DNA of 63,579 bases, counting the filler, from Octopus bimaculoides (Eukaryota): assembly GCF_001194135.2 (NCBI RefSeq). It is 8 parts of 8 records of this genome, joined end to end, with 100 filler letters (N's around TTAATTAATTAA, not from the genome) between each part and the next. Parts side by side here need not be neighbours in the genome. Positions count along the whole stretch, not along the records: positions 43,152 to 63,579 come from NC_068987.1; 7 more parts are not named here. The stretch is one strand, 5' to 3'. The notes beneath the pieces were generated by a model, which was given only the letters and a program-made list of their open reading frames with translations, was not told the origin of the DNA and ran no database searches. Shown piece by piece: positions 2,908-63,579 of the stretch. Made by a program: the position numbers and the translations under genes. Position 1 is the first letter of the stretch. The number at the start of each line of letters is the position of its first letter.

Positions 2908-3990
2908 AAGTAATTAAGATTCATTTGAATTAGGTACTTAAGTTGAAGCACCAAGTCAGTCCTTTATTATCCCCATAGCTCGAAGTAAGGTGAATAAAAT
3001 CAAAATAAGTAACACGATGTCAAGTAGTCACGCAGTACGACCGTTTCAAGTGGCCTCACTTACTGGAACGATGTAATCATTACATCAATTTAAATACAAC
3101 GCTACCTTCTGTAGCAAGAAATATGGATTTTCAACACACAAGATATATTAATATAATTTTTTTTTAATATTTTAACAGAGCAAGAGGATGAAAGAATTTC
3201 CTGTTGTCACTATAGCAGCAAGAATAGCTAAGAGAAGAATAACTACAATTTCGGGGGTGTGGCATGGGACACAGAGGAATCATAAGGTCGTAATTCATTT
3301 CCAATTTATCTATCTCCTTATCATCAACAAAAAATCTAAGACTAGAAGACTGCATTTATGTAGACGAAAGAGCAAAGTGAGTTGACAGCTCATAGCTAGC
3401 TGTTGGTCATAAATTTCATACTGTCACAAGTATCCCTCAACCCACAAGGAAAAAGACAAAACTTTAGAAAGAGTCAACTAGATAGTAGTAAATGTCTATA
3501 AAAGAGGTAGGGTAGGGTTGACATTAATTAATGATGTTTTTACCAGTTAAAAGAGCAAACATTATGAAACTTAGGATGCTACTATGATATCTAGGAAAAC
3601 ATTAGGGGCTCAGCGGGAGAACACTTATGAGCAAATATTGTTATGTTGTATAAAAATAATAAAATTGTAAAAATAAAAGTTAAAAAAAGGAAAACATGCT
3701 AGAAAGCATTATCTTAACCAGATTAGCTAGGAAGGATATATGGATCAATTTAAACATTAAACAGATTATTAATAAGTAGAATCCACTTAATACCTCATCA
3801 TTGCATAATTAATTATTAGCTGGTCGCTATAAAGACCACTCAAATCAAATATCTAAGAAAAGTTATATATCTCGTCTGTTGAAAATTCTTATTTCTTGCA
3901 GCTGAAGATAGCGCTGTATTTAAATTGATGTAATGATAACATTGTTCAATTAAATGGAGCCGCTTGAGACGGTTAATTACTTTGATGATA

Positions 3991-4305
3991 TCTATAATCT
4001 ATATATATATAAAACTGAGCCTGTCTGTCAGTCAATCTGTCTGTCTGTCTGACTGTCTATATTCGTGCATCACTGAAACTCGAGAGCTACCCAACCGATT
4101 TCATTCAAATTTTACACATGCCTTACATAGAGTCCATGCAGTGTCGTGGACCAAAACAATTTCAACTTCTTACCTAATGCGAGCCCGGAGCAATCTCTCA
4201 TCTCTTACAGTATTTCAGTATTACGTGTCAAAAGTGAAACAATAACATCTCTATTGTGAGATAATATTTCAGTTTTAATAGTTTCACTGAAACTATTATA
4301 TATAT
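3991..4305 (+). mobile_element. Non-autonomous Helitron-like element, 5' portion
   Basis: Starts A|TCTATA..TATATATAAAA, followed by (CTGT)n and accgatttcattcaaattt. This layout is typical of non-autonomous Helitron/DINE-like elements. The 3' end is lost in the gap. Confidence 0.6.
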
Positions 4306-4405
4306 NNNNNNNNNNNNNNNNNNNNNNNNNNNNNNNNNNNNNNNNNNNNTTAATTAATTAANNNNNNNNNNNNNNNNNNNNNNNNNNNNNNNNNNNNNNN
4401 NNNNN
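4306..4405. other. Artificial scaffold spacer: 44 N + TTAATTAATTAA + 44 N
   Basis: The same N-TTAATTAATTAA-N block of about 100 bp recurs near 16367, 18315, 23163, 27198, 34527 and 43052. The 12-mer has stop codons in all six frames. Confidence 0.95.
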
Positions 4406-4478
<73 letters not shown>

Positions 4479-4864
4479 CATGTGCAGAACCTCCATTGGT
4501 CAATCTTGGCTATCCATCTGCACATGCTTGTTTACATTTAGTGAGGAAGGGGGCTACAAAAGTGGTGTTGTTGGCATTTCTCCTGTCAACAGATCCCTTA
4601 CTCCCTTTGCATCTTCAGAGACAAATGTGAAGAAGGGATCCGTTACTTGAAAAATAGATAAGGGTTAGTGACAGCTAGGGCATCTGGCTGTAAAATAATG
4701 CCTCAATAATACATTTGTCTAACCTATTCTGAGCACGGAAAAAGTGGTCATCAAAATGAACAAAAAGTACAGATATATAAATATATCCACTATGAACGTG
4801 TATGTTCATGCATAAACACACACACACACACACATGTATGGTCAAGCATTGCATATGTCCATAT

Positions 4865-5150
4865 CTTTTGTCTTTTGCTTGTTCCAGTCACTGGACTGTG
4901 GCCATGCTGGAGCACTGCCTCAAAGGGTTTTAATCAGACAGATTGACCCCCCACCCAGTAGTTATTTTAAGTCTGGTACTTGTTCTATAAGATTCTCTTG
5001 CCAAACAGGCTTCCTCACAGTTTCCACCTACCAAATCCACTCACAAGGCAGTGGCCAGCCCAGAGCTGTAATAGAAGATATTTGCTCAAGGTGCCACGCA
5101 GTTGGAATGAACCTGAAGCCACATGGTTGAAAAGCGACGTTCTTAACAAC
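4865..5150 (-). mobile_element. tRNA-type SINE, family C (degenerate)
   Basis: Reverse complement of head (gtggcaccttgggcaa..agaagac, ccttgtgagtggatttggtag) and tail (ccagcatggccacagtc) seen at 13092-13485. Confidence 0.75.
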
Positions 5151-5598
5151 GACGTTCTTATAAATGCACACACACACACACACACACACACGTATACACC
5201 TACAAAACAGATTTAGTTTCCATCTGGTTTGATTTTGTAATTGTTTATACAAATATAAACAAAATAAATACACCATATGTACACACACATTATATATACA
5301 CACACATTCTGTTTGGGACCTCATCTTATGTATGTATGGTGTGTGTGTGTGTTCAAATTTAAGTCCAAAAATAATAAAACAAACAACAGTACGTAATCAG
5401 TGTTGTCCCACTGTCAGAGCCTCCTAAGTAAATGCCAACATTTGGAAATAATTCACTTTTTAAGACTAGAAATAAATAAGCTATTAACAGAGATAGCATC
5501 AGCTATTGACTAGTTGAAAAACCTATTTTAAACTGACAAATAAAGGAACAACAGCCCCATTTTGGGGGACTTAAGCTCTATTTTGAGGGTGTATACTC

Positions 5599-5895
5599 TT
5601 AACCCTTTCATTACCATATTTGGTAAACATATCTGTTGCAAAACGTTGCTTTTGTTTCAATTAATTTTGAAAATAATGAAGAATTTATTAAAATAACTTT
5701 GTCATTATTCAGCTTGTGTTTGGAATATTAACATAAAATTTTAATAGTTTTAATTTAGTTCACTTTAACCCTTTTCTTACAACATTTCAAGAGAAACTTT
5801 GAAAATAATGACTACTTTGGTAAAAATAATTTTGCCTTTAGTTAGCTGGTGTTTTTGGAACTTAAATTGACATGATGGAAGGTTTTAATTTAGAT
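5599..5895 (+). repeat. Unclassified interspersed repeat (family F), two tandem units each starting TTAA|CCCTTT
   Basis: ttaaccctttcattacc at 5599 and ttaacccttttcttac at 5765. The body (tttcaattaattttgaaaataatga...agctggtgtttggaac) recurs at about 46390-46520. TTAA-CCC starts suggest a piggyBac relationship. Confidence 0.5.
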
Positions 5896-5964
5896 CTCTC
5901 AGTAAACTCTATAAACTGCTATGCTGTGAGAACTCATTAGATTCGTTGAGAAGAGGACACCTCT

Positions 5965-6208
5965 TTAGTGCTGGTGCCACAAAAAAAAGCACTCGGTAAG
6001 TTCAAGAAAATGGCTGGTGTTAGGAAGGGCATCAGGCTGTAGAAACCAAAGCCAAACATTAAATGCAAGCAAGATGCAGTCCTCCAACCTATCTAGGTCG
6101 ACACAGTACCCTTGATTATATACTGACTCTGACTGTGACAACCTATCTGACCCATACCAGCATGGAAAGCAGTTGTAAAACAATGATGATGATGATGATG
6201 ATGATGAC
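5965..6208 (+). mobile_element. RTE-type LINE 3' end (family B)
   Basis: gttaggaagggcatc..gctgtagaaac...acccataccagcatggaaag..(GAT)n tail, as in 32706-32975 and 40254-40595. Confidence 0.75.
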
Positions 6209-6447
6209 ATAAACATTACCCTTGCAAAGCTCTATAAATCTAATCCTTGACATGATGAGTTGTTTGAGGACAGAAGTATAAGCTTAAATGTGACTCTAAT
6301 TATAGTTACAGTTTCTTTATCTTTGTCACGGTGGTGGTGCTGGTGGTGTCAATGATATTTCAAGAGTTTAATGAAGTCTCCAGACGTGAAACAGTCTAAG
6401 AATTGGATAATAAACCACTTCACAGCAAATATGATCGCAGATGTGAG

Positions 6448-6493
<46 letters not shown>

Positions 6494-6899
6494 TGAGAAT
6501 CTTTATATCTAAGTGTGTGTGTATGTGTGTGCATNNNNNNNNNNNNNNNNNNNNNNNNNNNNNNNNNNNNNNNNNNNNNNNNNNNNNNNNNNNNNNNNNN
6601 NNNNNNNNNNNNNNNNNNNNNNNNNNNNNNNNNNNNNNNNNNNNNNNNNNNNNNNNNNNNNNNNNNNNNNNNNNNNNNNNNNNNNNNNNNNNNNNNNNNN
6701 NNNNNNNNNNNNNNNNNNNNNNNNNNNNNNNNNNNNNNNNNNNNNNNNNNNNNNNNNNNNNNNNNNNNNNNNNNNNNNNNNNNNNNNNNNNNNNNNNNNN
6801 NNNNNNNNNNNNNNNNNNNNNNNNNNNNNNNNNATATATATATATATATATAATGTATGTGTATATGTGTGTGTGCATATAAGTATATGGATAGATAGT

Positions 6900-6985
6900 G
6901 GTATAGAGGAAGCCAGATTTTATAATGCCTGTGTGCGAACATCTATGCTATATGGCAGTGAAGCATCAGCTGTGACAGCTGAGGT
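6900..6985 (+). mobile_element. RTE-type LINE RT fragment
   Basis: Translates RFYNACVRTSMLYGSEASAVTAE, matching the RTE-clade LYGSETW region. Confidence 0.7.
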
Positions 6986-7887
6986 ATGTATGTATGTATG
7001 TATGTATGTATGTATGTATGTATGTATGTATGCGTGCATGTATGTATGTGTGCATGTGTGTGTGTTCATCTATTCATTTGAATCATTTTATGTCCATTTT
7101 TTTTTCCATACTTGTTTGTATGAACTCAGCGAATATATTATTTGAATCTTTGTTTTACAGCCAGATGCCCTTCCCATCACAAACCCTTATCTTAACTATT
7201 TTTCAAGTAAAGGATCACTTATTCCATACAGCTTCAAAGGCATGAAAGGACCAAAGGATTTGGTGATTGGAAAAGTGGCAACTTTCTTACAGTCACAGAT
7301 GTAAACACACACACACACACACACACACACATGCATGATGATCTGCTTTCAGTTTACAACTACCAAATGTGTGTGTATGTGTGTGTCTGGTTGCAGGTAT
7401 GGTTGAGTCATTAAGGAATTCACATCACAATTATGAGATTATTGGTTCAATCCCCTTCCACAGTAGATCAGGAGAGTGTCTTCCAGTAAGGGTCATCCCA
7501 AGCCATTTGGGTGAAAATAAGGGACATTGTCCAAAATGGGAGTCCATCAGTTGCACAATATCTGTAACTTATTACATGTGATGTCACACTGAAACTACCT
7601 GAGGATTATATGAGATTACATTTCTTTGCGGAATAATTAGCCACCTTCATCATCATCAACCACTGGACATTACTGTCTTGACTCTTAAGACTCATAGGCT
7701 TCCATGGTTTATTAGTGACCAATACCACAATATTCTCCACTTAACAGGAGGTCAGTTCATTGCAAGGCTAATCGTTTTACAGCTAAGTAGACTGGGGCAA
7801 CATAAAATGAAGTGTTTTGCTCAGGAACACAACACATCAACTAGTCTGGGAAATGAATATATATATGTGTATGTTTGTGTGTGTGTG

Positions 7888-7934
<47 letters not shown>

Positions 7935-8084
7935 NNNNNNNNNNNNNNNNNNNNNNNNNNNNNNNNNNNNNNNNNNNNNNNNNNNNNNNNNNNNNNNNNN
8001 NNNNNNNNNNNNNNNNNNNNNNNNNNNNNNNNNNNNNNNNNNNNNNNNNNNNNNNNNNNNNNNNNNNNNNNNNNNNNNNNNNNN

Positions 8085-8089
<5 letters not shown>

Positions 8090-8132
<43 letters not shown>

Positions 8133-8330
8133 ATTTGTGTCCTAATGACTCTGCATAGTGTGACAGCAGTAAAATATCACCATCATACAACAAGTGTTGT
8201 TTGCTTCCAGTCTTCCATGAAAACATATCTGGCCATGGGGAAATATTACTTTGCTTGGAAACAGGTGAAGGTTGGTGACAGGAAGAGCATCCAGACAGAA
8301 AATCTGCCTCATTTTTATCTGACCAAGCAA
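8090..8330 (+). mobile_element. SINE family C variant with RTE-like tail (C2), 3' part
   Basis: (TG)n then catggggaaatattactttgcttggaaacaggtgaaggttggtgacaggaagagcatcc, also seen at 29470-29530 and 31710-31740. Confidence 0.7.
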
Positions 8331-9359
8331 GGAAAAATAGATTCTGCTGACGATATATATATGCTCACGCTCAATGCATATATACACTGATGATATAAAC
8401 ACATATACACATACATACATCAACAAATATCATCACACACACACACTCACACATGCAAACACAGAGTTATGTATGGGTTAACATATTTAATCTAGGGAGC
8501 CAAAAGGAATTTTTAAATAACTGAAATTAAACATGTAATAAGGAGAAAAATCATTAACTTTACTGACAATTTTTGTAAGGGAGAGAACTTTAAAATTTAA
8601 ACTGATTAAAAATGAAAATGTTTGTAATGAATGGCCAAAAGATCAGATGAGCACTTTTGGCTGTTTGGCATTTTAAAAACTTTTGGAGAATATTAGAAAA
8701 TCATTATCAAGCGTGTATACAGACTCCTTCAAAATAAACACCAGGAAATATTTTCTTAGCAACTGATGCTTAGTTAAGATAACTATTTCTGTCTGAAAAT
8801 GTTGATGGGCTTCACATAAGAACATTGCCATAAATGCACACACATATTTGGAAATATATTACTATACATACAAACATACACATACATACATTGAAACATG
8901 AACTTATACAAAACTATATTCATACATATAAATGTGAATACATTATATACATACATATAATTATATACATACATATAATTATAAACATAGATATTCTATA
9001 TACATACACACTTTCTATAAATAAATATTCTATGTTTATAATTTCACATATGGAAACATTGAAAATTCTCAATGTTGAGTTTGATATTGAGATAAACCCT
9101 GTCAAATAGAGTTATTATTTATTATCAATGGGTGAATATATCCACATTTAAGACTGAAAATCAATTTAGCTTTCAACAGCTAGGTGGACTGAGACCATGT
9201 TGAATAATGTAGAACAAGAAATGGCCAACTGGAGCAGATATGATACCATGGTCTATGAACTGATATTCCAAAACCTTCAACCCGTTCAGCTATTCTTTTC
9301 TATAGAGATCTATATAAAAGTGTGTGTTTGAGTACACACACACACATGCATGCACACAT

Positions 9360-9690
9360 CTTCATTGTTTATATCATTATTTCAATGTCCATATTTCCAT
9401 GCTTGCACAGGTCAGAGGAACATGCAGAGGCAGACAGTCTTTGGCTCTTCCTGTCACCAATCTTTGTTTGTTTCAAGCACAAACAATACAATGATCAGAT
9501 GTCTTTTCACAGAAGATTGACAAACAAATGACACTGCTTATTCTGTTTAGAATTGGTATACACTGTCAAAAAAAAAACAATGACATATACACATTTAATG
9601 TACTTCATTCCATTTCTCTCCACCAGATTTACTCACAAGGCTTTGGTTGGGCTAGTGCTGTAGTAGAAGACACTTGCTGAAGATGAGACA
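9360..9690 (-). mobile_element. SINE family C2 copy (degenerate)
   Basis: Reverse complement of the tail catgcaagcatggaaatatggacattgaaa at about 9375-9410 and of the head ccaaagccttgtgagtaaatctgg at about 9620-9690. Confidence 0.6.
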
Positions 9691-9807
9691 ATTTCTCTGG
9701 CACCAGTGAATGAATGAAGACAGAATAGGGTAGAGAGAAATCACTCATCTTTCTGAGCATGACTGACATAAATGCTTTCCTGTCTTCAAACACATGAAGA
9801 GAAATAT

Positions 9808-9850
<43 letters not shown>

Positions 9851-10048
9851 GGGAGAGAAAAAGGGGCATTAAAATGAGAGAAACACTAAAAATATCTGAT
9901 GTCATGTAAATTGCATCAGATAGCAACATCAAATACGTGATACCAAAATGGTTGTACCAAAATGTATGAAAATACCCCTGTAAGTAATCACTCAAGTCAA
10001 ACTAGTATCTGGGACAAAATGATTCTGGCCTGATATCATGTATATTAT

Positions 10049-10225
10049 GGTGCTGAACTGACACCATCGTTAGCATGCTGGGCAAAATGCTTAGTGGCAT
10101 TTCATTTGTCTTCACATTTTGAGTTCAAATTCTGCTGAGGTTGACTTTGCCTCTCATCACTTCAAGGTCAATAAAATAAATACCAGTTGAGTACTAAGGT
10201 TAATGTAATCAACTTAACTACTCCT
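10049..10225 (+). mobile_element. SINE family A copy
   Basis: cgttagcatgctgggcaaaatgcttag...gagttcaaattctgctgaggttgactttgcc...aaataaataccagttgag. Confidence 0.8.
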
Positions 10226-11062
10226 CCATATAGCTATGTCTGCACCTCAATTAGCTTACAGAATAGCTTGGGAGAAGTAGTTAAAAAGTTTAAGAAGCAC
10301 TAAACTGGAGAATGGATTTGAAGAACTTGATGCGGATGTGTTGTGTGAATAGATTTGGTTGTGGGTGATTGTAGGAACCACAAGATAGAAGAAGTAATAG
10401 ATAGCACTGTTGCCACCATCAATGAACATCCATCCACCTATCTATTGATCTATCTGACAAATAACATAGGAGCATAGCTATAGCATACTTTTAAAGAAAA
10501 ACACAACAGCAACATCATCATCAACAACTTACAAAACAAGCATATGGACCCATGAAATGCAGTTTATTCTTTTTTTTTTTTATTAATTCTTTTTACTTGC
10601 TTCAGTTTCAAGACAGCCGCCATTATTATTTTTTGTTCCATAATGATGATGTATTTCACAAAGAACAGATTAACCGTGAGTTTTAGGTTAAACCAACAGA
10701 AGAAAATCTACAACAAAAACATTAGCACTCAATTGATTTGTCTTTTGTTTCATTTATTTATTTTTCAATCACAACTTTTAAAGGAATTAAGGTTATAAAT
10801 CGTTTCTAAAGTTTGAAAATAGTTGAAGGATTATTTATCTTGACATTTAAATGCACAACTGTCTTGTAGTTCCTCCAATGTCTTTTTTAGCACTACCCCC
10901 AATATTTTGTATATAAACAAAGTCTATGTTGATAACACTTTCAAGTAAACAGTGAATGTGAAAGACCCTTGAAACAAGAATTTTTAGTTCAGTATTTTTC
11001 TTAGAAGAAGAGGAAAACAAAATGAAGGAACTCTGTCAAAAAATCAGAATCAACAAGTAATC

Positions 11063-12104
<1,042 letters not shown>

Positions 12105-12500
12105 TTTAATAATAATAATTATAATCTCCTACATGCATGAAGAACTAATTTTATTTGTTACTTCTGAGAATATCTTTTTGTTATTTTTCCTTAGCTGCCC
12201 CCATCCCCTGCCTATACCCAGGAATAACAACAACAACAAAAAAAAACTAAAAACTTAAAGAAAACAACTCAGATATGTAGAATTCACTTAAATAACAAGT
12301 GCAGAAGAATTTAGTCTGTGACAAATGATGTTGGAACCAGATGGAATAGAAAGATTGGAAGAAGAACAGTAAAAATTCAAGTTACACTAATACAATGGAA
12401 AAAAGATACAGACAAACTACAGAGCATAGAACCATCATGCTTATTATCTGTGTCATCGTCATTATTATTTTTATTATTATTAATACTATGATTATTATTA

Positions 12501-12557
<57 letters not shown>

Positions 12558-12558
<1 letters not shown>

Positions 12559-12845
12559 GGTGGATGTCAGTACTCTCGACCGGCTTTGTGCTGGTGGCAC
12601 ATAAAAAGCACTATCCGAACATGATTGATGCCAGGCCCGCCTGACTGGCTCCTGTGCCAGTGGAACATAAAAACCACCTACTACATTCTTAGAGTGGTTG
12701 GCATTAGGAAGAGCACCCAGCTGTAGAAACATTGCCAGATCAGATTGGAGCCTGGTGCAGCTGCTGGCTCTCCAGACCTCAGTCAAACCATCCAACCCAT
12801 GCCAGCATAGAAAATGGACGTTAAACGATGATGATGAAGATGATG
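12558..12845 (+). mobile_element. RTE-type LINE 3' end (family B)
   Basis: ggtggcacataaaaagcac...gagtggttggcattaggaagagcacccagctgtagaaac...ccaacccatgccagcatagaaaatggacgttaaacgatgatg. Confidence 0.85.
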
Positions 12846-12846
12846 T

Positions 12847-13027
12847 AGTGAGTTGGAAGAATCATTAGTGTCAGGCAAAATACTTGGCAGCATTTCTTCT
12901 GACTCTTTATGTTCTGAGTTCAGATTCTGCTGTGGTCAGCTTGAAATAAGGACCAGTTGAGTACTGAGGGGAAGGGGGTGTATCTCCCTCCCCTCAAATT
13001 TCTGGCTTCTGTACCAATAGTAAAAAG
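12847..13027 (+). mobile_element. SINE family A copy (internally deleted)
   Basis: gagttggaagaatcattagtgtcaggcaaaatacttggcagc...ctgagttcagattctg...ccagttgagtactgaggg, followed by an (ATT)n tail. Confidence 0.8.
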
Positions 13028-43050: not shown

Positions 43051-43289
43051 ANNNNNNNNNNNNNNNNNNNNNNNNNNNNNNNNNNNNNNNNNNNNTTAAT
43101 TAATTAANNNNNNNNNNNNNNNNNNNNNNNNNNNNNNNNNNNNNNNNNNNNACAAACATGATCGTCAAAGTTAAAAATAAAAACATTACAAAATACCATT
43201 TATAAAATCCAAACTTGGAACGATATTTAGTTTCTCCGTCACAAACGAAACACAACATACAGAAATACCCAAAATAAAACAAATATTCT

Positions 43290-43500
43290 TTTCTACCCTA
43301 GGCACAAGCCCGAAATTTTGGGGGAGGGATCCAGTTGATTAGACCGACTCCAGTACGCAACCGGTACTTAATTTATTGACCCCGAAAGGATGAAAGGCAA
43401 AGTCGACCTAGACGGAATTTGAATTCGGAACATAAAGACAGACGAAATACCGCTACGCATTTCGCCCGGCGTGCTAACGTCTCTGCCTGCTTGCCACCTT
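43290..43500 (-). mobile_element. SINE family A copy
   Basis: ccctaggcacaagcccgaaa...gaaaggatgaaaggcaaagtcgacc...ttcgcccggcgtgctaacg. Confidence 0.9.
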
Positions 43501-43625
43501 CCAAAATAAAACAAATATTAATCAACATCAGGTATTCTAACAGACTAATAGATTGGATCATAGACGAGTACTTCAAGAAAAATAACGAAAAACATACACA
43601 TATTAAAAATAAGTGTATCATATTA

Positions 43626-44381
43626 GGATCCTTCTGAATTGACGGGCACCACTTTTCATTTATGTTTTATGTAGTGTTTTTGGTACAGAAACACTTTCAA
43701 ACTTCGTATACTTGTATATTTTGTGTTATAGAACAGATAAAAATTTCTGTGTTCGGTAATTGTCGTATTTTGGTAACTTCAACCAATCACTGACGTCTGT
43801 TGAGATGAAAACAATTACTGCTGTGAATTGTGAACACCACACGTTGTGCGATGTAATGGGATCTCTTCCCTCGAATAAAATTAGTGCCGCTGTTTGTCAA
43901 CAACTATCAGCGGTACTGTTATTTATAACATCGTTCGTGCATTTGTACTGGTTTTAGCTTTAGGGTTTTAGGGTTTTAGGGTTAGGGTTCGGGTTTTAGA
44001 GTTAGGGTTAGTTTTAGGGTTAGGGTTAGGGTTAGGGTTATGATTATTTTGCCATAACCTAACTCATAACACTAACCCTAAAACCCTAATCCTAACCCTA
44101 AACCTAACCCTAACCCTAACCCTAACCCTAAAACCTTAATCCTAACCCTAACTCTAAAACCCGAACCCTAACCTTAAAACCCTAAACCCTTACTAGGGAA
44201 TAACGATATAATTACCAGGGAATAACGATCTTGACACCGGCAAAAATTATTGTTTACAAAAATAGCAGTAACTGTATTCAGCTGAATAGACGTCAGTGAT
44301 TGGTTGAAATTATAGAAATATGACAACTTTAACATGAAATAACTTGCAAAACAAGTGGTGCCCGTCAATTCAGAAAGATCC
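43626..44381. mobile_element. Non-autonomous foldback DNA transposon (Merlin-like termini) with internal inverted telomeric-type arrays
   Basis: TIRs ggatccttctgaattgacgggcaccacttt vs ggatctttctgaattgacgggcaccacttg (28 of 30). TSD TCATATTA at 43618-43625 and 44382-44389. A ~75-bp subterminal inverted repeat. TTAGGG-type array about 43954-44040 and CCCTAA-type array about 44055-44190. Confidence 0.9.
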
Positions 44382-45299
44382 TCATATTAATCTAATACAT
44401 ATATTAATCATGAATTTCACCGTTTATTGAGTACTCACTTCATCTTTCGGTGACAAATAGTAACATTAGAACACACACGCATACACGCACACACAAAATT
44501 AACTCATATACACACATATATCAGTATATTGTATTGAATACACGATTGTGTTCTAGTTTTATCTTATTTATCAAAGTATTTTCGTAATTTTCACGGGAGT
44601 TTATTTCGAATAATAAATATTCTAATACTTTTAGATCTTCACAGTTTCGTCTTCAGTCTGAAGTGATATATTGCTATCTTCAAAAAATACTAGAACCATC
44701 TTAACAATAACAAGCCACAAGCATGTAAATTTATGATTACGCTACTAATAACCAATGTAAATTCGCTTGCAAACGTAGTAGTTGTAATTTTCACAACTCC
44801 AACTGCTATATTGATCATACAAACACTCACTGACCAGTTCACCAAGCTCACTAGTGGCAATGCACTATTTCATGCGACACAAAACACAACTAAATAGGAA
44901 AATAGTAGACAACATGTCTATACTTCAGAGAATTCTACACAAAACCAGACGATTAATTATGAAAGAAATACTAGCAATATCAATTAGTCAAAAAATGGAA
45001 ATAATCATCTGACTGATGACGTATAAATGTAACAGTAAAAATTCAAATCCCCATGGTAACCTATATATCAACTACATTGTTTCTGTCTACTATAAATGGG
45101 CAGCAACCTACATTAATATCACTCTTGAAGATAAGAATGTGAAGTTCTTAAGATATTAATACTGGATTTTAAATGTTTACTATTTGAAACAAATTTCAAG
45201 GAAATTATGTGAAAAGTTTTCGATGAAAAGATAAAAATGGAGTAGTCGTGATATCAAACCAACATACAAACATGTGTACGAGAGTGTGTGTGTGTGTGC

Positions 45300-47024: not shown

Positions 47025-47268
47025 GTTTCAAATTTTGGCACAAAGCTAATAATGTCGGGGGAGGGGCTAAATCGATTACATCGACCCAGTTTTCGACTCA
47101 CAGTTATTTTATCGACCCCAGTATTCAACTGGTACTTATTTTATTGACCCCGAGAGGATGAAAGGCAAAGTCGACCTCAGCAGAATTTGAGTTCAGAACG
47201 TAAAGACGCGCGAAATGCCGCTAAGCAATTTCTCCGGTGTCCTAACATTTCTGCCAGTTCACCGTCTT
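47025..47268 (-). mobile_element. SINE family A copy with internal duplication
   Basis: ggtttcaaattttggcacaaag...atcgaccc block present twice...gaatttgagttcagaacgtaaagacg. Confidence 0.88.
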
Positions 47269-63183: not shown

Positions 63184-63579
63184 GGCACTGTTTTGGGACC
63201 ATTACTGTTCATAATGGCCCTCTCAGACATGCCTTCAGCCACAGAGAGCCACGGTCACAAGTTATGCAGATGACACAAAAGTCTCACAGGTAATACAGAA
63301 CCCTGAAGACATTATGCACCTGCAATGTGAGCTGGATGAAATATACAAGTGGGCTGAAAAGAATAACATGCAGTTTAATGCTGAAAAGTTTCAAGCCTTA
63401 TGCTATCAGCATGCAAGACTAAATGCAGAACCCATGAAATACACTGGACCTGGAGGGACTGCAATCCCAGAGGCAGAGACAGTGCGAGACCTGGGCATTT
63501 ACATGAGTAATAATGCATCCTTTCATGTTCATGTTGCTAAATTGTCAATGAAATGCAGGCGACTGACCGGATGGATTCT
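63184..63579 (+). mobile_element. CR1/L2-type LINE RT fragment (continues beyond the window)
   Basis: GTVLGPLLFIMALSDMP / VTSYADDTKV (YADD at 63263-63274)..WAEKNNMQFNAEKF..VRDLGIYMS. Confidence 0.92.

What the first reader, a model, noticed from the sequence alone, without database searches (positions are those of the whole stretch)
43618..44389. Foldback transposon carrying mirror-image telomere repeats that mimic a chromosome fusion
Seen: perfect 8-bp TSD, GG-starting 30-bp TIRs, a second ~75-bp inverted block, and a central (TTAGGG)n then (CCCTAA)n arrangement, the orientation expected of an end-to-end fusion. However, the variant string gttagggttcgggttttagagttagggtta (43981-44010) is mirrored exactly at 44143-44172, so the arrays are inverted copies inside a mobile element. 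Established: 8-bp TSD with GG termini fits Merlin/IS1016 better than hAT, and TTAGGG is the common metazoan telomere repeat. Inference: a MITE family that disperses interstitial telomere-like, G-quadruplex-prone and cruciform-prone sites, possibly recruiting telomere-binding proteins and confounding fusion-site searches.
Basis: partly seen in the sequence, partly recalled or inferred. Interest (0 to 1): 0.8.

Follow-up and report, generated by a model that had tools for sequence, protein, structure and literature searches.

The report
Octopus Merlin MITE carrying mirrored telomere repeats
This is a small, non-coding "jumping gene" of the Merlin family in an octopus genome that carries telomere-type repeats in head-to-head orientation, so it looks like the scar of a chromosome fusion but is mobile-element cargo.

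Summary
A 756-bp element (43626-44381) has 29-bp terminal inverted repeats (TIRs) that start with GG and match at 28 of 29 positions. It is flanked by a perfect 8-bp target-site duplication (TSD), TCATATTA. It has a second inverted block and a core of TTAGGG-type repeats followed by CCCTAA-type repeats, including an exactly mirrored 30-mer.

- An O. bimaculoides contig carries a second complete copy: 87% identical, its own 8-bp TSD, a perfect 29-bp GG-TIR, and the same telomere-like array with the same variants in the same order.
- The element's terminal and subterminal sequences also occur, in the right orientation, 0.5-1.2 kb downstream of Merlin (DDE_Tnp_IS1595) transposase genes in O. bimaculoides and O. 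sinensis.
- Two other Merlin families checked here give 8-bp TSDs and GG termini in 6 of 6 insertions.

So this is a Merlin-derived foldback miniature inverted-repeat element (MITE) whose telomere-like core is inherited family cargo. It is not a fusion relic, not a local telomerase insertion and not an assembly artefact.

Untested: copy number (two full copies seen), a full-length autonomous partner with both ends, and any G-quadruplex or telomere-protein function. The finding is moderately interesting as a new variant of a known kind.

The parts
43618..43625 (.). Left target-site duplication, TCATATTA
   Evidence: Identical to 44382-44389. Chance about 2.8e-5.
43626..43654 (+). Left terminal inverted repeat, GGATCCTTCTGAATTGACGGGCACCACTT, starting with GG
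   Evidence: 28/29 match to the right TIR. Only two matches in the window and none in 100 shuffles. Homologous to the TIRs of the L004 MITE and of the end downstream of Merlin gene P0004.
43655..43759 (+). Left subterminal region. Positions 43644-43723 are shared with the 3' end of the O. bimaculoides Merlin element. The mirror of this region is deleted from this copy's right arm.
   Evidence: 87.5% over 80 nt to L004 4505-4584. 84/98 identity over the first 100 nt including the TIR. The right-arm counterpart is present in the L004 MITE (pair I7).
43760..43822 (+). Left arm of the subterminal inverted repeat, with the core TTCAACCAATCACTGACGTCT (CCAAT and TGACGTC motifs)
   Evidence: 63 nt, 84% complementary to 44264-44326. 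The 21-nt core is identical in all four arms of the two copies and recognisable downstream of Merlin gene P0121.
43823..43949 (+). Left-arm-specific spacer with a small internal hairpin (GTGCCGCTG...CAGCGGTAC)
   Evidence: No counterpart in the right arm. Conserved in the L004 copy apart from a 22-nt indel.
43950..44046 (+). G-strand telomere-like array: 9 perfect TTAGGG plus TTTTAGGG, TTCGGG and TTAGAG variants, with four consecutive perfect units at 44014-44037
   Evidence: G-quadruplex motifs. The same variant order occurs in L004 at about 5890-5970.
44047..44057 (.). Centre of the foldback (TGATTATTTTG), part of the conserved central motif TATGATTATTTTGCCATA
   Evidence: The central motif is conserved in the L004 copy as TATGATTATTTTTGCCATA.
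44058..44192 (+). C-strand telomere-like array: 10 perfect CCCTAA, with 44143-44172 the exact mirror of 43981-44010
   Evidence: Inverted pairs I1, I3 and I9. Much shorter in the L004 copy, about 5983-6015 with one perfect unit.
44190..44229 (+). Two direct copies of TTACYAGGGAATAACGAT, 22 nt apart, specific to the right arm
   Evidence: family D6. Conserved in the L004 copy.
44264..44326 (-). Right arm of the subterminal inverted repeat. The surrounding 44234-44351 is homologous to the 3' flank of O. sinensis Merlin gene P0121.
   Evidence: pair I4. 82.8% over 122 nt, colinear, to L006 11926-12047.
44353..44381 (-). Right terminal inverted repeat (reverse complement GGATCTTTCTGAATTGACGGGCACCACTT)
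44382..44389 (.). Right target-site duplication, TCATATTA

Best explanation
The feature is one insertion of a non-autonomous, foldback-shaped miniature inverted-repeat element (MITE) of the Merlin superfamily, in an octopus genome.

Shown:
- The element has GG-starting 29-bp TIRs and an 8-bp TSD.
- A second, independently inserted copy in O. bimaculoides has the same architecture.
- Its terminal and subterminal sequences are homologous to sequence lying just downstream of Merlin (DDE_Tnp_IS1595) transposase genes in two Octopus species.
- The telomere-like array, with its idiosyncratic variants in the same order, is shared by both copies. It therefore travelled with the element.

Inferred:
- The element is cut and pasted in trans by a Merlin transposase that binds the TIR and the conserved subterminal CCAATCACTGACGTC block, making a staggered 8-bp cut at the target.
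- The head-to-head order (TTAGGG)n then (CCCTAA)n exists because the element is an inverted duplication around a centre (TATGATTATTTTGCCATA). A single ancestral telomere-type array is therefore represented on both arms.
- The long, partly exact mirror in the window copy reflects either hairpin-templated repair or conversion in this lineage, or loss of part of the C-arm in the other copy.
- The core is passenger DNA. It incidentally creates a site prone to G-quadruplex and cruciform formation, and it mimics a telomere-telomere fusion.
For: - Anatomy and statistics.
- Merlin definition from the literature: TIRs of 24-462 bp with terminal 5'-GG and 8-9 bp TSDs. O. bimaculoides is unusually rich in Merlin, with 191 protein hits (PMC8101967).
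- Second copy, L004 5575-6284: TSD TAACGTTG on both sides, perfect 29-bp TIR GGATCTTTGGGGTTTGACGGGCAACATTT, 87.3% identity over 589 aligned columns, same G-array variants, same centre, C-type repeats on the far side.
- Link to transposase genes, locus 1: L004 encodes P0004 (277 aa, PF12762, E = 5e-17) at 3223-4056. An element end at 4602 reads, in reverse complement, GGATCTTTTTTAAAACGGGGGCCACATTTTTCATT... It is 84/98 identical to the window element's first 100 nt.
- Link to transposase genes, locus 2: L006 (O. sinensis) encodes P0121 (289 aa, 72% identical to P0004) at 10001-10870. Positions 11926-12047 are 83% identical and colinear to the window's right subterminal block.
- The two loci together reproduce the order of the MITE's right arm.
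- In-session control: two other Merlin families gave 8-bp TSDs and GG termini in 6 of 6 insertions.
- TTAGGG is the only experimentally determined cephalopod telomere motif (PMC13218726 and PMC6160780).
Against: - Only two complete copies and two end fragments were seen, in about 131 kb of octopus DNA. Copy number is unknown.
- No full-length autonomous element with both matching TIRs and a TSD was recovered. Homology between the three related gene copies stops about 8-50 bp upstream of the start codon, and no left end was found. The end fragments next to the genes could in principle be truncated MITEs that landed there.
- The three TIR variants differ at 7-11 of 29 positions, so the exact autonomous partner of the window's subfamily is not identified.
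- The origin of the telomere-type array (capture, telomerase healing or microsatellite growth) is not resolved.
- The species of the window is inferred, not proven.
Confidence: 0.85

Rival explanations
1. It is the relic of an ancestral end-to-end (telomere-telomere) chromosome fusion, as at human 2q13.
For: Head-to-head orientation, (TTAGGG)n then (CCCTAA)n. This orientation defines fusion-type interstitial telomeric sites (PMC6410037).
Against: The arrays sit inside a unit bounded by TIRs and a TSD. The two arms share an exact mirrored 30-mer of variant repeats. A paralogous copy at another locus carries the same array with the same variants. Independent telomeres would not share these features.
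Confidence: 0.01
2. It is a MITE of another superfamily that also makes 8-bp TSDs (hAT, P or a MULE). The Merlin-gene neighbours are coincidental MITE fragments.
For: An 8-bp TSD alone does not discriminate between superfamilies. No complete autonomous element with both ends was recovered. Foldback forms are known in P (Galileo) and Mutator (Tm1) relatives (PMC3573991 and PMC3169594).
Against: The termini begin GG rather than with the hAT-type terminal consensus (from my own knowledge). Homologous end sequences lie in the correct orientation within 0.5-1.2 kb downstream of Merlin genes at two independent loci in two species. Only one other copy of the family was found in the remaining ~110 kb, so double coincidence is unlikely; I estimate roughly 1e-4, as an inference. 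Other Octopus Merlins show the same TSD and terminal rule.
Confidence: 0.07
3. The telomere repeats were added locally, by telomerase-mediated repair of a double-strand break or by microsatellite expansion, inside a pre-existing MITE at this locus. They are not family cargo.
For: Short interstitial telomeric sites in vertebrates arise at break-repair sites (PMC8537989). The C-arm is much longer here than in the second copy.
Against: The G-arm, including the variants TTCGGG, TTTTAGAG and TTAGTTTTAGG in the same order, is present in the L004 copy with only about 3 mismatches in about 70 nt. That is better conserved than the element as a whole.
Confidence: 0.03
4. It is an assembly artefact: a palindromic chimera or collapsed reads in a gap-rich draft.
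For: The piece is a draft with several N gaps. Palindromes can be produced by library artefacts.
Against: The arms are imperfect (84-90% complementary), with arm-specific segments and indels. The same architecture exists in an independent contig of another assembly.
Confidence: 0.02

Closest known systems
Merlin superfamily DNA transposons and their MITEs (Feschotte 2004; survey in PMC8101967)
   Same: 8-bp TSD, TIR of at least 24 bp starting 5'-GG, and ends homologous to sequence flanking DDE_Tnp_IS1595 transposase genes. The host, Octopus, is known to be rich in Merlin.
   Different: It carries a head-to-head telomere-type repeat core and has a foldback body. My searches of the held literature found no description of a Merlin element with such cargo.
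Foldback-type elements with internal tandem repeats: Drosophila FB, Galileo (P superfamily), Tetris, Tm1 (PMC4079207, PMC3573991, PMC3169594)
   Same: Extensive arm-to-arm complementarity, internal tandem repeats and a strong hairpin/cruciform potential (z = -22).
   Different: The arms are short and interrupted by arm-specific segments. The tandem repeats are central rather than forming the TIRs. The repeat unit is the host telomere motif. The superfamily is Merlin, not P or MULE.
Fusion-type interstitial telomeric sites, e.g. human 2q13-q14 (PMC6410037)
   Same: The orientation (TTAGGG)n then (CCCTAA)n, with degenerate units.
   Different: It is bounded by TIRs and a TSD, the arms share mirrored variants, and it is present at more than one locus. 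So it is transposed, not a fusion point.
Elements associated with telomere repeats: Oxytricha telomere-bearing elements (Tc1/mariner, PMC4724952) and rotifer Terminons/Athena (PMC6431247)
   Same: Mobile elements that contain host telomeric repeats.
   Different: In those elements the repeats are at the termini, or serve to attach the element to chromosome ends. Here they are internal, palindromically arranged, and have no shown role.

Membership tests
Merlin superfamily (non-autonomous member) | Target-site duplication of 8-9 bp | tested here: met
   Window copy TCATATTA. L004 copy TAACGTTG. Control Merlin families gave 8 bp in 6 of 6 insertions.
Merlin superfamily (non-autonomous member) | TIRs of at least 24 bp with terminal 5'-GG | tested here: met
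   29-bp TIRs beginning GGATC in both copies and in the end downstream of P0004. Definition taken from PMC8101967.
Merlin superfamily (non-autonomous member) | Ends homologous to those of an element encoding a DDE_Tnp_IS1595 transposase | tested here: met
   84/98 identity to the end 546 bp downstream of P0004 (L004). 83% over 122 nt to the 3' flank of P0121 (L006). Both are in the expected orientation.
Merlin superfamily (non-autonomous member) | A complete autonomous partner with both matching TIRs and a TSD | tested here: inconclusive
   No left end was found upstream of P0004, P0016 or P0121. The copies sampled are decayed or carry nested insertions.
MITE (operational class) | Short (under ~800 bp), non-coding, with TIRs and a TSD | tested here: met
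   756 bp. The longest stop-free reading frame is 70 aa, and a query made of its concatenated stop-free reading frames had no protein homologue.
MITE (operational class) | High copy number in the host genome | not testable with these tools
   No eukaryotic genome search was available. Two complete copies and two end fragments were seen in about 131 kb.
hAT superfamily | hAT-type terminal consensus and a hAT transposase partner (the 8-bp TSD is shared with Merlin) | tested here: not met
   The termini are GGATC.... The linked transposase genes are PF12762, not hAT. The hAT terminal consensus is from my own knowledge.
Drosophila-type Foldback (FB) elements | Very long TIRs built of tandem subrepeats | tested here: not met
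   The TIR is 29 bp and unique. The tandem repeats are central. Only the overall hairpin shape is shared.
Fusion-type interstitial telomeric site | Head-to-head arrays at a unique junction of two ancestral chromosome ends, with independent arrays and no transposon boundaries | tested here: not met
   The orientation criterion is met. However, TIRs and a TSD bound the unit, variants are mirrored, and a paralogous copy exists.

The most novel reading that the evidence does not exclude
The telomere-type core may not be a passive passenger. The G-arm is the best-conserved internal part between the two copies. A second, unrelated inverted-repeat element in O. sinensis (L005 7149-7601) also has a TTAGGG-like array at its centre. 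Octopus DNA transposons might therefore have repeatedly acquired telomere repeats because these help the element. Possible benefits are recruitment of telomere-binding proteins, or a G-quadruplex/hairpin that aids excision, repair or silencing escape. In that case such MITEs would supply a large share of octopus interstitial telomeric sites and fragile palindromes in a lineage known for heavy genome rearrangement.
Probability: 0.1. Interest if true: 0.75.

Novelty: new variant of a known kind. Interest (0 to 1): 0.45.

Why it matters
- It is a practical warning. In cephalopod and probably other genomes, a head-to-head TTAGGG/CCCTAA site cannot be read as a fusion point unless transposon boundaries and paralogous copies have been excluded.
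- It adds a characterised non-autonomous family, with three TIR subvariants, to the poorly curated Merlin complement of Octopus.
- It identifies dispersed sites prone to G-quadruplex and cruciform formation. These could be tested as fragile sites or as binding sites for telomere proteins.

Tried and rejected
1. Exact scans for the TIR core (TTCTGAATTGACGGGCACCAC) and the conserved subterminal core (TTCAACCAATCACTGACGTCT) found nothing in the metagenome, prokaryotic-genome and viral collections. This was expected, since those collections hold no cephalopod DNA.
2. I searched the protein database with a query made by joining eight stop-free reading-frame segments of the element (389 aa), hoping for spurious gene calls on other copies. 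There were no hits.
3. Rfam and tRNA scans of the piece found nothing.
4. Look-ups of a window reading frame and of P0010 were not on record.
5. Contigs for P0014 and P0142 turned out not to be octopus: they have no SINE and no MITE. They were useful only as a Merlin TSD/TIR control.
6. The left end of the autonomous element was sought by BLAST, nhmmer and motif search upstream of three gene copies and was not found.
7. The alternative boundary (TIR AGGATC..., 6-bp TSD) was considered and set aside, because the second copy has an unambiguous 8-bp TSD.
8. Literature searches for a described Merlin or MITE with telomeric cargo found none. Repbase and Dfam could not be consulted, so prior annotation as an unclassified octopus repeat cannot be excluded.

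Full report
**1. What is in the window**

The piece (43152-63579) is AT-rich (34% G+C) metazoan DNA, full of microsatellites, N gaps and decayed transposons.
- The 8-mer TCATATTA occurs at 43618-43625 and again at 44382-44389.
- Immediately inside these lie GGATCCTTCTGAATTGACGGGCACCACTT (43626-43654) and, in reverse complement at 44353-44381, GGATCTTTCTGAATTGACGGGCACCACTT. That is 28 of 29 matches.
- With up to three mismatches this pattern occurs only at these two places, and never in 100 dinucleotide-preserving shuffles.
- A fixed 8/8 direct repeat has a chance of about 2.8e-5 at this composition.
- A second inverted block, 43760-43822 / 44264-44326, is 63 nt long and 84% complementary.
- The centre holds a G-strand array (43950-44046; 9 perfect TTAGGG plus TTTTAGGG, TTCGGG and TTAGAG variants). 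A C-strand array follows (44058-44192; 10 perfect CCCTAA).
- The variant-rich 30-mer at 43981-44010 is the exact reverse complement of 44143-44172.

The two halves are not a perfect palindrome.
- The left arm has about 80 nt after the TIR that the right arm lacks.
- There are arm-specific spacers at 43823-43949 and 44193-44263.
- As single-stranded DNA the element still folds at -187.7 kcal/mol, against -70.8 +/- 5.3 for shuffles (z = -22).
- G-quadruplex motifs are present on both strands.
- One ambiguity remains: from this copy alone the boundary could be shifted by one base, giving TIR AGGATC... with a 6-bp TSD.

**2. Which organism**

A tRNA-derived SINE lies at 43288-43500 on the minus strand, and further copies lie at about 47106-47268 and 60734-60897. 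These match repeats in O. sinensis and O. bimaculoides loci at 75-85% identity. The last 400 nt of the piece match O. sinensis and O. vulgaris sequence at 86-89%. Contigs from unrelated animals fetched in the same way have none of these repeats. The window is therefore from an octopus, or a very close relative; the exact species is not established. The only experimentally determined cephalopod telomere motif is TTAGGG, in Amphioctopus areolatus (PMC13218726 and PMC6160780).

**3. Finding relatives**

Direct DNA scans of the available collections found nothing. Searching the protein database with the element's own spurious reading frames also found nothing.

The literature supplied the way in. 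A survey of Merlin (PMC8101967) defines the superfamily by TIRs of 24-462 bp with terminal 5'-GG and by 8-9 bp TSDs. It reports 191 Merlin protein hits in O. bimaculoides. Its supplement gave an O. bimaculoides Merlin protein, KOF79200.1. I used this protein, and then its relative P0004, as queries. I then fetched the genomic loci of the Octopus hits.

**4. A second copy**

Locus L004 is O. bimaculoides contig LGKD02092233.1, 8016 bp. At 5575-6284 it contains a 710-bp element with these features:
- TSD TAACGTTG at 5567-5574 and 6285-6292.
- A perfect 29-bp TIR, GGATCTTTGGGGTTTGACGGGCAACATTT.

A global alignment with the window element gives 87.3% identity over 589 aligned columns, with many indels. 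Shared features are:
- the subterminal block;
- the inverted block with its 21-nt core TTCAACCAATCACTGACGTCT, identical in all four arms;
- the left spacer;
- the G-strand array with the same variants in the same order (...TTTAGGGTTTTAGGGTKAGGGTTCGGGTTTTAGAGTTAGGGTTAGTTTTAGG...), with about 3 mismatches in about 70 nt;
- the centre TATGATTATTTT(T)GCCATA;
- C-type repeats on the far side;
- the duplicated TTACYAGGGAATAA motif.

Two differences are informative.
- The L004 copy keeps, on its right arm, the mirror of the left subterminal block (pair I7). The window copy has therefore lost about 80 nt there, and the ancestor was a more complete foldback.
- The L004 C-arm is short, with one perfect CCCTAA and about four loose units. 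Either the window lineage extended its C-arm by copying the G-arm, which would explain the exact 30-nt mirror beside arms that are otherwise only 84% complementary, or the L004 copy deleted it between CCCTAAAACC repeats. Two copies cannot decide this.

**5. Link to Merlin transposase genes**

*Locus L004 (O. bimaculoides).*
- It encodes P0004 at 3223-4056. P0004 is 277 aa and matches PF12762 DDE_Tnp_IS1595 with E = 5e-17.
- 546 bp downstream of the gene, an element end at position 4602 reads, in reverse complement, GGATCTTTTTTAAAACGGGGGCCACATTTTTCATTAACGTTTTACGTAGTGTTTTTGGTACCGAAAGACTTTCAAACTTCGTATACTT...
- This is 84/98 identical to the first 100 nt of the window element. It even retains an 11-nt stretch that the L004 MITE lacks.

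*Locus L006 (O. sinensis chromosome CM016877).*
- It encodes P0121 at 10001-10870. P0121 is 289 aa and 72% identical to P0004.
- About 1.05 kb downstream, after two nested insertions, positions 11926-12047 are 83% identical and colinear to the window's right subterminal block.

Both fragments are oriented as the right end of an element whose gene is on the plus strand. Together they reproduce the order of the MITE's right arm.

In the remaining ~110 kb of octopus DNA sampled, the family occurs only once more. Two such coincidences are therefore improbable; my rough estimate, an inference, is about 1e-4.

The left ends of these gene-bearing copies were not found. Homology among the three gene copies stops about 8-50 bp upstream of the start codon. 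A complete autonomous partner is therefore still missing.

**6. Control for the 'Merlin rule'**

- An 8.7-kb element around P0077 in O. sinensis and O. vulgaris has 354-bp TIRs starting GGCGATG / GGCATAG. Its TSDs are GCAAATCT, CAAGGCTT and GAAACTTT.
- A 2.5-kb element around P0142, from a non-octopus ENA assembly, has the TIR GGAACTTCTTCGC... Its TSDs are CAATTTTA, AATGTTAT and GGGAATTT.

That is six of six insertions with 8-bp TSDs and GG termini.

**7. Interpretation**

The element is a Merlin-derived foldback MITE. The telomere-like core is inherited family sequence. This excludes a fusion relic, a local telomerase insertion (at least for the G-arm) and an assembly artefact.

The head-to-head orientation follows from the inverted-duplication architecture of the element.

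The TIRs of the two MITE subfamilies differ from each other at 7 of 29 positions, yet are identical or nearly so between the two arms of each copy. This fits arms that are generated or homogenised from one another, for example by duplication of one end or by hairpin-templated repair. That is an inference.

Mobilisation in trans by a Merlin transposase, and a role for the invariant CCAATCACTGACGTC block as a binding site (or an incidental promoter-like motif), are also inferences.

**8. Comparison with known systems, and novelty**

- Merlin MITEs, foldback elements with internal tandem repeats (FB, Galileo, Tetris, Tm1) and elements bearing telomeric repeats at their ends (Oxytricha telomere-bearing elements, rotifer Terminons) are all known.
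- I found no report of a Merlin element with internal head-to-head telomere arrays. A recent O. vulgaris repeat annotation lists Merlin and MITE families but does not mention telomeric content (PMC13282606).
- Repbase and Dfam could not be checked.

I rate this a new variant of a known kind, of moderate interest. It is a clean, verified example and a caution for fusion-site searches. It has only two full copies and no evidence of function.

**9. Limits**

Copy number, the share of octopus interstitial telomeric sites due to this family, the full autonomous partner, the ancestral state of the C-arm, and any structural or protein-binding role could not be tested with the tools available.

Noticed in passing
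window 43269-43519: A tRNA-derived SINE of about 213 bp on the minus strand (43288-43500) is flanked by a perfect 19-bp direct repeat, CCAAAATAAAACAAATATT (43269-43287 / 43501-43519). This is presumably its target-site duplication. Related SINE copies lie at about 47106-47268 and 60734-60897, and there are many in the O. sinensis loci L005 and L006.
   Followed up: partly
L005 7149-7601 (O. sinensis VCDQ01004827.1): A different inverted-repeat element has arms of about 45-75 nt (7177-7221 / 7538-7582). It carries a single-orientation degenerate TTAGGG/TTTTAGGG array (7399-7492) at its centre. It has no sequence similarity to the Merlin MITE outside the array. This hints that telomere-like arrays inside inverted-repeat elements may recur in octopus.
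   Followed up: partly
L001 4265-12990; L003 4252-12991; L002 ~3878-12950: An unusually large (~8.7 kb) Merlin element has 354-bp TIRs and an internal inverted duplication (4638-4981 / 9412-9755). It encodes the intact 305-aa transposase P0077. It is present at three loci at 99.3-99.6% identity in O. sinensis and O. vulgaris, each with a perfect 8-bp TSD. It looks recently active.
   Followed up: partly
L004 4603-5566: The complete MITE copy lies only about 970 bp beyond the end of the Merlin gene-bearing copy on the same O. bimaculoides contig. This could reflect local hopping or clustering of Merlin-family insertions.
   Followed up: no
window 57602-58250: A remnant of a mariner-type transposase (PF01359 Transposase_1, E = 2e-7 for 58056-58250) runs into an N gap.
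   Followed up: partly
window 52465-54914 (minus strand): Decayed non-LTR retrotransposon fragments. The reading frame at 53124-53432 has a weak RVT_1 match (25.4 bits, below the Pfam cut-off).
   Followed up: partly
window 63184-63579: The end of the piece is 86-89% identical to a repeat that also occurs inside the 8.7-kb Merlin element (L001 6615-7016) and elsewhere (L001 15358-15755). It is an unidentified interspersed repeat.
   Followed up: no
window 43787-43803 and 44283-44299: The 21-nt core of the subterminal inverted repeat combines a CCAAT box with a CRE-like TGACGTC. It is identical in all four arms of both MITE copies. It may be a transposase-binding site or a promoter-like motif carried to new loci.
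   Followed up: no
L006 11185-11600 and 11640-11870: Two further small foldback/MITE-like insertions with long inverted arms are nested in the 3' region of the O. sinensis Merlin copy.
   Followed up: no
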